DNA from: Tetramitus jugosus
Lineage: Eukaryota > Protista > Heterolobosea
Reading direction: 5' to 3'
Assembly: GCA_937625935.1 (NCBI GenBank)
Contig: OW569360.1
Coordinates: 310,001 to 374,000, forward strand
DNA: 64,000 nt
Shown here: piece after piece, positions 8,683 through 46,089 of the stretch
Layout: the number at the start of each line of letters is the position of its first letter
How positions within the stretch are numbered: the first letter of the stretch is position 1
The notes under the pieces: model-generated
Databases searched by the model: none
What the model was told of the DNA's origin: nothing
The model's input: the letters and a program-made list of their open reading frames with translations, nothing else
Translations under genes and position numbers: made by a program

Positions 8683-8743
8683 TCTAACTTACACCGATTA
8701 AAAATTAATTTAACCTTTACCTGATGGATTTAACTCAAAAGAT

Positions 8744-8840
8744 CTCCCATACCGGGACTCGAACCCGGGTCTTCCGGGGACTTTTGCATTTCAGCTTGGA
8801 AGTGAAAGCCGGATATCCTAACCAGCTAGACTATATGGGA
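8744..8840 (-). tRNA. tRNA-Glu(TTC) with 24-nt canonical intron (8779-8802)
   Basis: Minus strand TCCCATATAGTCTAGCTGGTTAGGATATCCGGCTTTCA-[intron]-CCCGGAAGACCCGGGTTCGAGTCCCGGTATGGGAG; stems pair; TTTT terminator at 8737-8740. Confidence 0.95.
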
Positions 8841-8847
8841 ATATATC

Positions 8848-8895: not shown

Positions 8896-10284
8896 CGCCG
8901 ATGAAAAAACGAACAAACACCCCTGTTGTTCGTGAGTATGAGAATCCACGCTATGCTGTGTGGACCACAGCACCAAGAGGAACTGCTCCAAGCAGCAAGG
9001 AGGTCATCATCACTGGAAAGTGCGATGACTCTCCAAAAGCTGCCTTGGCCAAGAAAATTGGCTTGGATTTTGGTGATTTGCTCACCAGGGTCCAAGTCAT
9101 CAAGAAGGGCCCCAAGAGGTTTGTTGCGTGGGTAACTGTTGTTGATGACAACATTTACCCATTTGTTGAATCCTTCAACCGCAACAAGAAGATGAGTGGC
9201 TGCAAGGCAGCACTCAAGCACAACGTTGATTGTGACAAGAAGGTCGTCCTCCACGGAGTCAAAGGTAAGACGGAGGACGACATCAAGGCCATGCTCGGCA
9301 CAACAAAGGTCAAGAATGTGCTCAAGAAGCACAACACTGCCTTTGTTGTGATGGAGTCTGAAACGTATGCCGAAGCTTTGCTTCGGAACGTTCAAGCCAT
9401 GCCAGTGGAGGTGGAAGCAAAGCGCTTCCTTCCACGCCCACGTGACCCTGTCAAGGCTGTCAGCAAGAGGCTGACTAAGATGTATCAAGAACTCCTGGCT
9501 GTGGTGGACGACCTGCGCCACCAAGTCAGTGTGTTAAAAGAAATGGCTTCCGACAACCGGATTCCCCTCGAGTCCCCGTCTCCAAGGACGCCGGACCGAA
9601 TCTCCGAATTCGAACCTTCGACTCCGTCTACGACCGATGACTGGGAGTCGATCATGCCGGAGTCCCGCCCCGTTACTCCAACTACGGTCACCCAAGAGCC
9701 AACCAACAACACCATTGATGAGGATGCTCGTAACAGAGCAATCCTCGAGCTAGTATTGAACACCTCCGAGGTGTTCACGAAAGCCAAGAAGGAGATTGCT
9801 GCCCGAGCAATCATGGTGGACCGTGCAAGAAGCACAACCACACAAGAGGATCCAGTTGAGTTGGACCTCTGTAACCCCGACTGCGAGTTACAGAGTCCCC
9901 AACTCAACGAGAACAAGAAACGATCAGCACGTGTCACCGTTGGTGACACTACTGCTAACAAGATCCCGGCCAGGTTGGCCAGTATCAAGTCAGGTGCTCT
10001 CCGTAGGTCCTACCAACTGGCTAGGACTACGGAGCCATCTGATCTCACCAGTGGTGCTCCAGTCGGTAGTGGAGGCCCTCGCAACGAATCCCTGAAGAAG
10101 GGATCAAAACAACATTCCAAGAAGAGAATGAATCCTGTTGCGTAGGCCTGCCACTCCACTGGGCAAGCACCACACCATGTTAGACAATTGAGAGCAGGCA
10201 AGCCTGCTCTCAAACAAAAGAAAAATAAAAGTTCCGCAACGTGGTGCTCACGCACCATTTGTTGTATTAAAAAAAAAAAAAAAA
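8896..10284 (+). mobile_element. Poly(A)-tailed retro-insertion, head-to-head 55 bp upstream of tRNA-Glu; non-autonomous, ORF1-only
   Basis: Direct repeat AAAACGTTTTTTGAGGTGA at 8877-8895 and 10281-10299; A16 at 10269-10284; single ORF; visibly more GC-rich than flanks; 3' hairpins. Confidence 0.88.
8901..10145 (+). CDS. ORF1-like nucleic-acid-binding protein (RRM-like domains + coiled coil + basic disordered tail), 414 aa
   Basis: ATG 5 nt inside the element; KKVVLHGV..EDDIKAML..NTAFVVMESETYAEALL is RNP2/RNP1-like; heptads LTKMYQELLAVVDDLRHQVSVL; no RT or endonuclease motifs. Confidence 0.7.
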   Translation: MKKRTNTPVVREYENPRYAVWTTAPRGTAPSSKEVIITGKCDDSPKAALAKKIGLDFGDLLTRVQVIKKGPKRFVAWVTVVDDNIYPFVESFNRNKKMSGCKAALKHNVDCDKKVVLHGVKGKTEDDIKAMLGTTKVKNVLKKHNTAFVVMESETYAEALLRNVQAMPVEVEAKRFLPRPRDPVKAVSKRLTKMYQELLAVVDDLRHQVSVLKEMASDNRIPLESPSPRTPDRISEFEPSTPSTTDDWESIMPESRPVTPTTVTQEPTNNTIDEDARNRAILELVLNTSEVFTKAKKEIAARAIMVDRARSTTTQEDPVELDLCNPDCELQSPQLNENKKRSARVTVGDTTANKIPARLASIKSGALRRSYQLARTTEPSDLTSGAPVGSGGPRNESLKKGSKQHSKKRMNPVA

Positions 10285-23935: not shown

Positions 23936-25211
23936 TCACACCAGATCACGTTGTTTTCTCATCCCTTTCAGAGATATTGAGTGGTGTTCACAATACTCAA
24001 GTACCTTGACTACGAAAGTATGGTCTCGTCCGTTGTTGTACCAACTGAGTCCGCGAGTGCCCTTCAAAGAAACTAATGCTCTCTCTGAGATCGATTCTTG
24101 ACTGCAGCCATTCATATAGAGTGTATGAACACCAGACAAATGAGGAAACGCATTGTCGGTGATTTGAAGGCAATAACTCATATCAAGTGTGTGAATGCCA
24201 GTCAAATATGAAAATGCATCATCCGTGACATTCTTACAACCAATCATAATGAGAGTGTGAATTCCCTTCAAATAAGAAAATGAGTTATCAGTGATTTGAT
24301 TGCAACCACTCATATTGAGAGTGTGAATGCCAGTCAAGTAAGAAAATCCCTCCTCCGTGATATTCTTGCAACCACTAATACGGAGCGTGTGAATGCCAAT
24401 CAAATGAGGAAACGCACGATCTGTGATTTGATGACAATCAGTCATATCAAGTACTTGAATGCCTGTTAAATGAACGAATGCTCGATCGGTAATTTGATTA
24501 CAATACCTCATACTAAGGGTGTGAATTCCAGTCAAATACCCAAAAGCCTGATCTGTGATCCGTTTGCACGATGTAATATCAAGCGTATGAATGCCAGTCA
24601 AATGACGAAATGCATTGTCTGAAATTTGATTACAATAACTCATTCCGAGTGTGTGAATACCAGTCAAATGTGAAAAGGCCTGATCTGTGATTCGAATACA
24701 AGATCTCATCTCGAGTGTGAATACCAATCAACTGCGAAAAGGCTTCATCCCTTATATGGTCACAAGATATCATTTCAAGCGTGTGAATGCCAGTCAAGTA
24801 AGAAAATCCCTCCTCCGTGATATTCCTGCAACCACTAATACGGAGCGTGTGAATGCCAACCAAATGAGGAAATGCACGATCTGTGATTTGATAGCAGTAA
24901 CTCATATCAAGTGTGTGAATACTACCTTTGAAAAACTGGAAATGCTCATCCGTCACATAAGGACTTCTGTACAAGTTAACATTGAACAGTGTGCCCTTCG
25001 CCAGCTTAAACAACTGCTCAATCTCTACAGGCTCCATATCGTGTTTGAGTGTCATGCTCTTGTTGGACATGAGAAGTCGATTGAATTTAAATTGATTGAG
25101 CCCTTTGCAAGTGTAACTCAATCGCATCCATTCTCGAGTGTCACAAAACTCGATCACTTTTGACCATGCATCCTTGCAAAGTTCAGAACAAATTTCAATG
25201 CTCACTTCCAT
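23936..25211 (-). pseudogene. F-box-like + 22-aa LRR (IHTLxMSxCxxITDxAFxxLxG) gene with a 2-bp frameshift near 24716
   Basis: Two consecutive ORFs in different frames; ATTCACACTC where sister repeats have ATTCACACAC; internal duplicate offset 460 = 7x66 - 2. Confidence 0.8.
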
Positions 25212-33091: not shown

Positions 33092-34051
33092 ATGAAGCGA
33101 GAAAAGACAGAGGACTCAGACGATGATACCAATGAAACAATCAAGCGAAAGAGAGCCAATGAAAGTTGTGATGAATGTGTTGTCACAACAGACATGAGTG
33201 AATTTTTTGAAATTTGTTCCGTACTCTGCAAGGATGCATGGTCAAAAGTGATCGAGTTTTGTGACACTCGAGAATGGATGCGATTGAGTTACACTTGCAA
33301 AGGGCTCAATCAATTTAAATTCAATCCATTGCTCCTGTTCAACAAGAGGATGACACTAAAGTGCGACATGGAATCTAAAGAGATTGAACACTGGTGGAGA
33401 TTAAGAAGCAACACACTGTTCAATGTTGACCTGAATGGAAATCCTTATGTGAATGATGAGCATTTCCAGTTTTTCACAGCTCGTCTTCACACACTCTGTA
33501 TGAATTTTTGTCAGCAAGTGACAAACAAGGCATTTTCTTATTTGACTGGCATTCACACGCTCGAGATGGTATATTGTCATCAAATTACGGATCAAGCCTT
33601 TTCACATTTGGGTGGTATTCACACACTCGATATGAGCTATTGCAGTCGAATTACAGACAATTCATTTCGTTATTTGACTGCCATTCATACACTTATTATT
33701 GCTAATTGCAAACAGATCACAGATAATGCCTTTGTGCATTTGACTGGAATTCACACGCTTGATGTGAGTGGTTGCGACTCCATCACAGACAATGCGTTTT
33801 CTTATTTGACAGGGGTTCACACACTTGATATTCGATCTTGCCTTCAGATCACAGACAATGCATTTCCTCATTTCGTTGGCATTCACGCACTTGACATGAG
33901 TGGATGCTATCAAGAATCGATCACCGAGAAGGCATTAGTTTTTTTGAAGGACATTCGTAGGCTGTGTTGGTGTAACAGACGAAACCATAATCTCACGTAC
34001 AAGGTGCGCAGACATTGTAAACGGCACTCGATAACTCTGAAACTGAACTAG
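33092..34051 (+). CDS. F-box-like + 22-aa IHTL-type LRR protein (intact paralogue of 23936-25211)
   Basis: LCKDAWSKVIEFC..RLSYTCK F-box-like motif; about 7 IHTL repeats. Confidence 0.85.
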   Translation: MKREKTEDSDDDTNETIKRKRANESCDECVVTTDMSEFFEICSVLCKDAWSKVIEFCDTREWMRLSYTCKGLNQFKFNPLLLFNKRMTLKCDMESKEIEHWWRLRSNTLFNVDLNGNPYVNDEHFQFFTARLHTLCMNFCQQVTNKAFSYLTGIHTLEMVYCHQITDQAFSHLGGIHTLDMSYCSRITDNSFRYLTAIHTLIIANCKQITDNAFVHLTGIHTLDVSGCDSITDNAFSYLTGVHTLDIRSCLQITDNAFPHFVGIHALDMSGCYQESITEKALVFLKDIRRLCWCNRRNHNLTYKVRRHCKRHSITLKLN

Positions 34052-44414: not shown

Positions 44415-44543
44415 TGTGTTTGTCGTTTCTGTTAGTTGTGGTGGATACCTGACTGTGAGTTTAGAAGGCACATGCCTGTAGTTCGCCTGCACACTTCCTT
44501 TCGCGGACGATAGAATGACAGTGCCATCAGACCTCTGGGCACC

Positions 44544-44655
44544 TTTTTTTTTGATACAACGCGCAGTTGCTCACTTTATTGTTTATCATTCTTTCCATTA
44601 GTTTCACTTATACTCATTGTGCCGCTCGCAGAGCGTTACTTCAGTTTGTAGTCCC
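44544..44655 (-). mobile_element. 112-bp poly(A)-tailed retro-insertion, head-to-head 44 bp upstream of tRNA-Ala
   Basis: Exact 14-bp direct repeat GACCTCTGGGCACC at 44530-44543 and 44656-44669; T9 at 44544-44552; minus-strand 3' end AATAAAGTGAGCAACTGCGCGTTGTATC-A9 resembles that of 8896-10284. Confidence 0.85.
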
Positions 44656-44661
44656 GACCTC

Positions 44662-44691
44662 TGGGCACCCAATACTCTATTTTTAGAAATA
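44662..44691 (+). promoter_or_regulatory. Upstream motif TGGGCACC-N15-AGAAATA of tRNA-Ala
   Basis: Same boxes and spacing as upstream of tRNA-Glu. Confidence 0.5.
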
Positions 44692-44699
44692 CAGAAAGA

Positions 44700-46089
44700 G
44701 GGGTCATGGCTCAGTTGGTACCCGAATGAAAAATCACATGAGGCAACCAGCACCTGACTTTCGTTGCCCCAGATCCTGACTCGGATCAAGTCCGGTGCTG
44801 ACTAACTCAGAGTCAGCACTGGAGTCAGGTACAAACCAACCATCTGCAGTGGTCCAAGTCGCCATTCATTATCAGGTGCCGACTTGCTCAAGTCAGGTAT
44901 TGTGTCCTGTGCAAACTCATGACCCAAGTCAACATCAGGCTAACAAGGAGAAACAGGGCGAGTGAGGGGCCAAAAAAATTCTTGTAATCTTATGAGAGAA
45001 TGAAGAAAAACTTTTATTGAATATTTTTCGTGAATCAAAATCAACCCTTCTGGACAGATTCCAAAGAAAACTCTCATCACTCGGTAAGTGGGCAATCACT
45101 GATCTTTGTACTTTATCTCCGCACGTCTGATCAAGGAGACTCCTCGTGAGAATTGGTTGATCATTATTTCTCCGACAATTTTGAGCAAGGCGTGAGTAGG
45201 AAAGAAGTTGTAAGTTATAAATACAAACAAATTGCGAAGTTCGACATACCATGTACAGTTTTCTTTGTTATTCGACAACTTCTCTCCACTGTGAAAAAGG
45301 AGGGTAAGTGACATCAACAATTTACAATAAAGAAAATTGATACTGACCTAATACAATGCTCATTTTTGTTTTGGCACCTTTCAATATCCTTTCCTCAACT
45401 TTCAGAGCAGGCATTGCTTCATCATTCTCCAGCAAGCAAGTCACTCATATCTGATTGAAGTGAAAATTCAAAAAATCACAAGTGATCGAAACATAAATAA
45501 AAAGAACAAACTTACTAGTATTCAGTCTCAACTCTTTCTTGATCTGTTTGTTCAACACCTGTTCCTTGTGTCAGTACTTGCTCAGTAGATGGAGCTGCAG
45601 GAGTAACAATCTGCTTCTTGTCAGATGTTTCTTGAGTCGTTGTGGTCACACGTCTTGAGATTCAATAAGGGAGTTTGTATCCCAACTTAAAAATTTTTGT
45701 TCTTGGAAGCAGTTGCGTTTGGGTTAGTTGTGTTCGGTTTGTTGGAAACAAACCGACTTCGACAAATTCAAGTGGTTGGTTGTGATTAGCAGTTGAGAGA
45801 GAGATCGGGCTAAAATATCGACTCAGTTGACTTGCTGTTTTTTCACTTAACTCATGGTTCAGTGGTGTACTTCTTGTGAGTCAGTACCTGAGTTGTATTC
45901 CAACTTTCTTGATGGAGTTGACACTGGAGTCGGCAGCAGCTTTTGTCGAGTCAATTCCCGACTTTTTTGTCGAATTAGGCAGCTCCTGACTCATGACCTG
46001 ATCTCGCATAGTCAGGTTCCCACGTTTTATTCGGGTAGAGCGCGTGCTTTGCATGCATGAGGTCCAGGGTTCGATTCCCTGTGGCTCCA
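44700..46089 (+). tRNA. tRNA-Ala(TGC) interrupted in the D-loop: 5' piece 44700-44720, 3' piece 46036-46089
   Basis: GGGGTCATGGCTCAGTTGG(TA) + GAGCGCGTGCTTTGCATGCATGAGGTCCAGGGTTCGATTCCCTGTGGCTCCA reconstitute a full cloverleaf with G3:U70; TTTT follows. Confidence 0.9.
44721..46035. mobile_element. 1315-bp non-autonomous DNA transposon-like element inserted in tRNA-Ala
   Basis: Ends CCCGAATGAAA.. / ..TTTTATTCGGG are inverted repeats (1 mismatch in 11); TA duplicated at 44719-44720 and 46036-46037; CCTGACT/AGTCAGG subterminal repeats at both ends; no transposase ORF. Confidence 0.82.

What the first reader, a model, noticed from the sequence alone, without database searches (positions are those of the whole stretch)
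44700..46089. tRNA-Ala(TGC) gene split in the D-loop by a 1.3-kb TIR element
Seen: removing 44721-46035 and one TA restores a complete tRNA-Ala (acceptor GGGGTCA/TGGCTCC with G3:U70; D stem GCTC/GAGC; intact anticodon and T arms). The insert has CCCGAAT-R-AAA inverted ends. Standard tRNA scans would miss this gene or call a fragment. Known: DNA transposons that target tRNA bodies are rare (Dada, which lacks TIRs); a TA TSD fits Tc1/mariner, while CCC ends with short TIRs, subterminal repeats and a 2-bp TSD fit some EnSpm/CMC elements. Inference: this may be a tRNA-D-loop (GGTA)-targeting DNA transposon. One site cannot show specificity.
Basis: partly seen in the sequence, partly recalled or inferred. 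Interest (0 to 1): 0.85.

Follow-up and report, generated by a model that had tools for sequence, protein, structure and literature searches.

The report
CACTA-type transposon targeting tRNA D-loops
A small cut-and-paste transposon of the EnSpm/CACTA group sits inside the D-loop of a different multicopy tRNA gene in all four of its copies in this protist genome, a habit I found described only for the unrelated Dada transposons.

Summary
Observation confirmed. Removing 44721-46035 and one TA restores a tRNA-Ala(TGC) that matches 14 intact paralogues across the junction. The insert is a non-autonomous element with four genomic copies (93-99% identical). All four interrupt the D-loop of a different tRNA gene (Ala, Met, Gly, Tyr), in both orientations, each with its own 2-bp duplication (TA, TG, AG, AG). 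So it is not TA-specific and not Tc1/mariner. Its ends match EnSpm/CACTA elements of this genome (CCCG ends, 2-bp duplications, DDE transposase). A transposase-coding relative in another assembly also abuts a tRNA-like 5' half; only that one junction is on the contig. A fifth, one-sided D-loop junction (tRNA-Asp) comes from the sister lineage, whose three full copies are not in tRNAs. Targeting is well supported; the mechanism is inferred (tethering to the Pol III gene complex, about 55%). No autonomous partner with matching ends is in the assembly. The scan reported this family before, from the Gly and Tyr copies (s1-541442, s1-553299). New here: the Asp junction, and a second, unrelated element with a 4-bp duplication that splits two tRNA-Asp genes.

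The parts
44700..44720 (+). tRNA-Ala(TGC) 5' half (acceptor 5' strand, D stem, D-loop up to the duplicated TA at 44719-44720)
44721..46035 (-). Non-autonomous EnSpm/CACTA-type element, 1315 bp; strand assigned from the transposase-coding relative L047, whose 5' end matches the window-right end
44721..44731 (+). Terminal inverted repeat, window-left (11 bp, one mismatch to the other end)
44754..44896 (.). Subterminal cluster of AGTCRG motifs in both orientations (7 copies)
45250..45293 (-). 44-nt stretch 89% identical to a host gene at C39:271722 (PB1-UBA-like by my reading of the sequence); possible captured fragment
45289..45347 (-). 59-nt GT..AG intron-like segment conserved in all four copies; skipped in contigs of run X3, which looks like RNA
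45753..46015 (.). Subterminal cluster of AGTCRG motifs (6 copies)
46025..46035 (-). Terminal inverted repeat, window-right; the first 21 nt are 20/21 identical to the end of the transposase-coding relative L047
46036..46037 (+). Second copy of the 2-bp target-site duplication (TA)
46038..46089 (+). tRNA-Ala(TGC) 3' part (anticodon arm, T arm with B box, acceptor 3' strand)
44530..44669 (-). Context, not part of the element: short polyA-tailed retroelement piece (44544-44655) with a 14-bp duplication (44530-44543 / 44656-44669), head-to-head, 31-44 bp upstream of the same tRNA gene

Best explanation
The insert is a non-autonomous EnSpm/CACTA (CMC clade) cut-and-paste element, moved in trans by a DDE transposase that binds its short terminal repeats and subterminal motifs and leaves a 2-bp duplication. 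SHOWN: four copies, each in the D-loop (3' part of the A box) of a different multicopy tRNA gene, both orientations, variable 2-bp duplication. SHOWN: the same ends on transposase-coding elements. INFERRED (about 90%): the pattern comes from targeting at insertion, not from survival alone. INFERRED (about 55%): the transpososome is placed by a protein contact with the complex bound on tRNA genes (TFIIIC or Pol III), through the transposase or the second ORF, and cuts about 30 bp upstream of the B box with a few bases of slack. Each insertion kills one of 9-15 near-identical gene copies, so the cost is small in a gene-dense genome.
For: 4/4 copies in D-loops of Ala, Met, Gly and Tyr genes. No other copy of either end at up to 3 mismatches, apart from one 3-mismatch hit with a broken terminus. 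The Gly and Tyr copies are 99.3% identical but sit in different genes and opposite orientations, so they are recent independent jumps. Chance for three further hits in any tRNA body is at most 1.5e-6, assuming 600 genes and only 15% of the genome tolerating insertions. Fifth junction at tRNA-Asp, C35. L047 from another assembly: same end directly after an A-box-type half, background rate 4e-4; its 20 nt equal the start of a real tRNA-Asp. Cut sites lie 16-20 nt from the 5' end and 29-35 nt from G53 with no shared sequence, which fits a tether better than base reading. The same genes attract upstream retroelements.
Against: Only four two-sided sites. No autonomous element with this family's ends in the assembly. 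The three full sister elements with intact-looking ORFs are not inside tRNAs, so if their transposase moves this family the specificity is hard to explain. L047 and C35 junctions are one-sided. No direct evidence for any protein contact. No read-level bridge of the Ala junction was listed.
Confidence: 0.58

Rival explanations
1. Targeting is real, but the transposase or ORF2 protein reads tRNA-gene DNA directly (A box and/or B box), as proposed for Dada, and cuts at a loosely fixed distance.
For: All sites lie inside the target and within 6 nt of each other; four of five are 29-31 nt from G53. Dada is thought to work by sequence recognition, and some Dada families hit several isotypes (PMC3706591, PMC8869645).
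Against: No consensus at the cut when sites are aligned on the duplication; both orientations are used; the Met site is 35 nt from G53. A 2-bp stagger is usually linked to short recognised sequences (argument in PMC3706591).
Confidence: 0.25
2. No dedicated targeting: tRNA genes are open, nucleosome-free and dispensable, so untargeted elements land and survive there in a compact genome.
For: An unrelated family (CTG ends, 4-bp duplication) also splits two tRNA-Asp genes. Two sister elements sit in LINE sequence. The genome is gene-dense.
Against: It predicts scatter over flanks, LINE stacks and the whole tRNA body, not 4/4 within a 6-nt window. Sister elements do survive elsewhere. Chance estimate.
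Confidence: 0.12
3. Assembly artefact, or one old insertion copied along with its flanks.
For: No listed contig bridges the Ala junction.
Against: Four different tRNA flanks, each with its own correct 2-bp duplication. Run X2 shows the Met junction, and depth over the element is about 2-5 times the flanks.
Confidence: 0.02

Closest known systems
EnSpm/CACTA transposons (CMC/CMCT clade)
   Same: Short terminal inverted repeats starting with C, subterminal repeats, 2-bp duplication; relatives encode a DDE transposase with C(2)C and H(3)H motifs and a RAG1/Transib-like fold, plus a second ORF; captured host-gene pieces (PMC12730594, PMC6004678).
   Different: Ends are CCCG rather than the usual CA..TG. 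I found no report of tRNA-gene targeting in this group (open-access library only, Repbase not searchable).
Dada DNA transposons (PMC3706591, PMC8869645)
   Same: DNA transposons inserted inside multicopy tRNA genes, some in the A box; low cost because targets are redundant; some families use several isotypes.
   Different: Dada has 6-7-bp duplications, no terminal inverted repeats, a transposase allied to hAT/P/MuDR/Kolobok, and a fixed site (nt 8-13 or the anticodon arm). Here: 2-bp duplications, terminal repeats, CMC transposase in relatives, sites at nt 17-22 with slack, both orientations.
TRE5/TRE3 and Ty3/Ty1 retroelements
   Same: Position set relative to Pol III genes regardless of isotype, through protein contacts (TRE5-A in PMC3706591; Ty1/Ty3 from my own knowledge).
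   Different: They are retroelements and land beside the gene, sparing it; this element lands inside and destroys the copy.
Tc1/mariner and ESTA (TA-specific)
   Same: 2-bp duplication; TA at this one site.
   Different: Other sites have TG, AG, AG; sister elements have CA, CA, AC.

Membership tests
EnSpm/CACTA (CMC) | Target-site duplication of 2-3 bp, not sequence-specific | tested here: met
   TA, TG, AG, AG, checked against intact paralogues; sister elements CA, CA, AC
EnSpm/CACTA (CMC) | Short terminal inverted repeats plus subterminal repeats | tested here: met
   11-bp repeat; 13 motifs in the ends, 0 in the middle
EnSpm/CACTA (CMC) | Termini 5'-CA..TG-3' ('in most cases', PMC12730594) | tested here: not met
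   Termini are CCCG..CGGG, but the transposase-coding relatives carry the same CCCG ends, and the feature is not universal
EnSpm/CACTA (CMC) | DDE transposase with C(2)C and H(3-4)H motifs, encoded by the element or its partner | tested here: inconclusive
   The window element encodes none. Met in the relative P0003, which shares a 20/21-nt end: D234, D321, E585, C340/C343, H561/H565; Pfam Transposase_21, DUF1258 and DUF4218 hits below curated cut-offs; 37 of 41 relatives hit Transposase_21; model matches RAG1 at E 1.8e-10. The link is through shared ends only.
Dada | Insertion inside small-RNA genes | tested here: met
Dada | 6-7-bp target-site duplication | tested here: not met
   2 bp at all four sites
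Dada | No terminal inverted repeats | tested here: not met
   11-bp terminal repeats present
Dada | Dada-type transposase | tested here: not met
   Proteins linked to these ends are EnSpm/CMC-like by motifs, Pfam and fold; no direct comparison with a Dada protein was run
Tc1/mariner | Obligate TA duplication | tested here: not met
   3 of 4 sites are not TA

The most novel reading that the evidence does not exclude
A lineage of EnSpm/CACTA transposons, present in at least two protist species, has evolved a tether to the Pol III gene complex that places insertions inside the D-loop of any tRNA gene. It would be a second, independent origin of tRNA-body targeting among eukaryotic DNA transposons and the first by tethering; the CTG-ended family that splits tRNA-Asp may be a third origin in the same genome.
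Probability: 0.45. Interest if true: 0.85.

Novelty: new variant of a known kind. Interest (0 to 1): 0.72.

Why it matters
Strict target choice among eukaryotic DNA transposons was described for Dada only in the papers I could read. A CACTA-type element with a 2-bp stagger that homes to tRNA D-loops of many isotypes would show that targeting evolved again in another superfamily, probably by another route. The genome offers a built-in comparison: a strictly targeted family, a sister lineage that mostly is not, and a second unrelated tRNA-splitting element. That makes the source of specificity testable by swapping ends, transposase and ORF2. It is also a lead for a safe-harbour integration tool, and a warning that tRNA scans miss such genes.

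Tried and rejected
TA-specific or GGTA-specific insertion: rejected. Autonomous copy with the same ends in this genome: none; no genomic transposase locus stands out as closer to P0003 than the sister family, and the long matches are 44-55% identical. More split genes with CCCG ends: none beyond C35 in B-box-anchored and A-box-anchored scans; one search was too loose and only partly listed. Excision footprints in GCTC/GAGC-type D-loops: none above control. Ends or junctions in metagenome and viral collections: no hits or chance hits only. Other transposase relatives (L048-L050, L120, L122, L123): contigs too short or no tRNA; L120 has a CCCGAATAAAA end at a non-tRNA site. A transposase remnant inside the element: one weak 60-nt match that did not hold across copies. 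A conserved coding frame inside the element: exon-like parts read separately show stops and frameshifts that differ among copies. ORF2 function: no Pfam hit; Atlas leads under 0.9 (BEN-domain clusters), not usable. The first clean control (4/4 versus 0/8, p=0.002) was weakened when C35 was found; 4/4 versus 1/9 gives about 0.007 by hand calculation. One search asked for too many letters; smaller requests to the same tool worked. The host lineage was not tested by me.

Full report
1. Observation. The window holds a tRNA-Ala(TGC) gene cut after the D-loop bases GGTA by a 1315-bp insert at 44721-46035, with TA on both sides. ARAGORN misses it in place and calls a normal 73-nt tRNA once the insert and one TA are removed. 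Fourteen intact genes elsewhere carry the reconstructed junction exactly, which fixes the boundaries and the 2-bp duplication. The ends are 11-bp inverted repeats. The motif AGTCRG occurs 13 times in the outer 300 bp of the two ends and never in the middle.

2. The family. The genome (26.35 Mb, 56 contigs) holds three more full copies. Each interrupts the D-loop of a different tRNA gene: Met(CAT) with duplication TG, Gly(TCC) with AG and Tyr(GTA) with AG. Ala and Gly copies lie in one orientation relative to the tRNA, Met and Tyr in the other. Intact paralogues number 14, 8, 9 and 12. Copies are 93-95% identical, except Gly and Tyr at 99.3%; that pair implies a recent jump between different genes. 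Searches for either end with up to three mismatches found no further intact end, so the count is 4 of 4. With 600 tRNA genes and only 15% of the genome tolerating insertions, three further hits anywhere in tRNA bodies have a probability of about 1.5e-6 (the gene number is assumed, not counted). Cut sites lie 16-20 nt from the tRNA 5' end and 29-35 nt from G53 and share no sequence.

3. Superfamily. The first 11-12 nt of the ends are shared with larger elements at C21, C29 and C45, about 98% identical to each other. These have ends CCCGAGTAAAAA and CCCGAATAAAAA, 2-bp duplications (AC, CA, CA), a transposase with weak Transposase_21 and DUF4218 hits, and a second ORF. None of the three is inside a tRNA; two sit in LINE sequence, one of them 1.9 kb upstream of a tRNA-Leu gene. 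A homology search not conditioned on flanks returned P0003, 49% identical, on contig JBBCKJ010002926.1 of assembly GCA_037189345.1. On that contig an end 20/21 identical to our element's window-right end directly follows a 22-nt tRNA-like 5' half. A random position ends in such an A-box pattern at a rate of 4e-4, and the first 20 nt equal the start of a tRNA-Asp in a bacterial genome, so the register is right although the isotype is unknown. Downstream lie an ORF2 homologue and the transposase. No opposite end occurs in the remaining 7.8 kb, so this junction is one-sided and the link from end to transposase is likely, not proven. P0003 has the D, D, E residues and the C(2)C and H(3)H motifs that define the CMC clade (PMC12730594), and its model matches RAG1 and Transib. 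In a tree it falls in a 100/100 clade with the sister family but on a separate branch.

4. A fifth junction. At C35:453595 a perfect 19-nt tRNA-Asp 5' half is followed by CCCGAATAAAG and then by deleted pieces of ORF2, the best piece 90-92% identical to the sister family. The other end and the 3' half are absent, and telomeric repeats follow within 3.5 kb. So the sister lineage can also hit the D-loop (1 of 4 sites). This weakens it as a clean negative control and suggests a bias shared across the clade, strict in our family.

5. Public reads. Run X2 shows the Met junction, an uninterrupted Ala gene, and depth of 48-130 over the element against 22-26 on single-copy flanks. Groundwater run X5 has the flanks and almost none of the element body. 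No listed record bridges the Ala junction itself. Run X3, whose type is not recorded but which looks like RNA, has high depth over 44974-45777 and skips 45289-45347, a 59-nt GT..AG segment on the minus strand conserved in all four copies. The variants seen point to the other copies. Read separately, the exon-like parts keep no common long frame, and 44 nt match a host gene. I read this as a transcribed, non-coding chimera of captured pieces.

6. Mechanism. Shown: structure, superfamily hallmarks and site pattern. Inferred, about 90%: targeting acts at insertion. Inferred, about 55%: a protein tether to the complex on tRNA genes sets the position, because isotype, orientation and local sequence vary while the distance to the promoter boxes stays within a few bases. 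Direct reading of A or B box DNA, as proposed for Dada, is the main rival (25%). Open chromatin plus survival is possible (12%) but does not explain the 6-nt window. The mobilising transposase is not identified in this assembly.

7. Comparison. It works like Dada in outcome but fails three Dada features: duplication length, terminal repeats and transposase type (PMC3706591, PMC8869645). It fits EnSpm/CACTA on duplication and end structure, departs from the usual CA..TG termini, and is tied to a CMC transposase only through shared ends. Searches of the open-access library found no tRNA-targeted EnSpm/CACTA element; Repbase could not be searched.

8. Earlier scan notes. s1-541442 and s1-553299 describe the Gly and Tyr copies of this family. 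I had reached the 4/4 result before reading them. The claim of a transposase-coding relative in another species was a lead that I tested and found true for one junction only. Notes on LINEs upstream of tRNA genes agree with the short retroelement piece 31-44 bp upstream of this gene. Those notes call the host a probable heterolobosean; I did not test that.

9. Verdict. Real feature, new variant of a known kind, interest 0.72.

Noticed in passing
L017:955-2040 (C6:165298-166380) and L127 (C42:364291-365375): A second, unrelated element (999 and 998 bp, 94.6% identical, ends starting CTGTT, 4-bp duplication ATAG at tRNA nt 12-15) splits two different tRNA-Asp(GTC) gene variants; removal restores both genes. 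Only these two copies were found, and no earlier scan note matched my words. Superfamily unknown.
   Followed up: partly
L128 (C48:241708): tRNA-Asp whose nucleotides 8-11 are replaced so that it reads CAG then ATAG; it looks like a deletion remnant of the CTG-ended element (inference).
   Followed up: partly
L129 (C8:231910): tRNA-Asp 5' part stops after nucleotide 15, the same point as the CTG-family site; no 3' part within 2.6 kb.
   Followed up: partly
L133 (C35:453595-457453): One-sided D-loop junction of a sister-lineage CCCG element in tRNA-Asp, about 3.3 kb from TTTGGG telomeric repeats.
   Followed up: yes
window 44530-44669: PolyA-tailed retroelement piece with a 14-bp duplication, head-to-head just upstream of the tRNA-Ala gene; at least 18 other copies of its tail in the genome.
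   Followed up: partly
L042:4415-4990 (C45): The C45 sister element carries about 575 bp of an RCC1/EGF-like host gene (my reading of the translation) just inside its 3' end, absent from the C21 and C29 copies: a Pack-CACTA-like capture.
   Followed up: no
L018, L043, L044 (C7, C48, C49) and L016, L046 (C6, C50): Further element ends starting CCCGAATAAAAA at non-tRNA sites; duplications not checked.
   Followed up: partly
window about 8900-10250: LINE-like pieces 94-97% identical to those flanking the C45 element, next to an odd 99-nt tRNA-like call at 8743-8841.
   Followed up: no
window 24112-24920 and 33486-33900: 66-bp-period tandem arrays, probably leucine-rich-repeat coding sequence.
   Followed up: no
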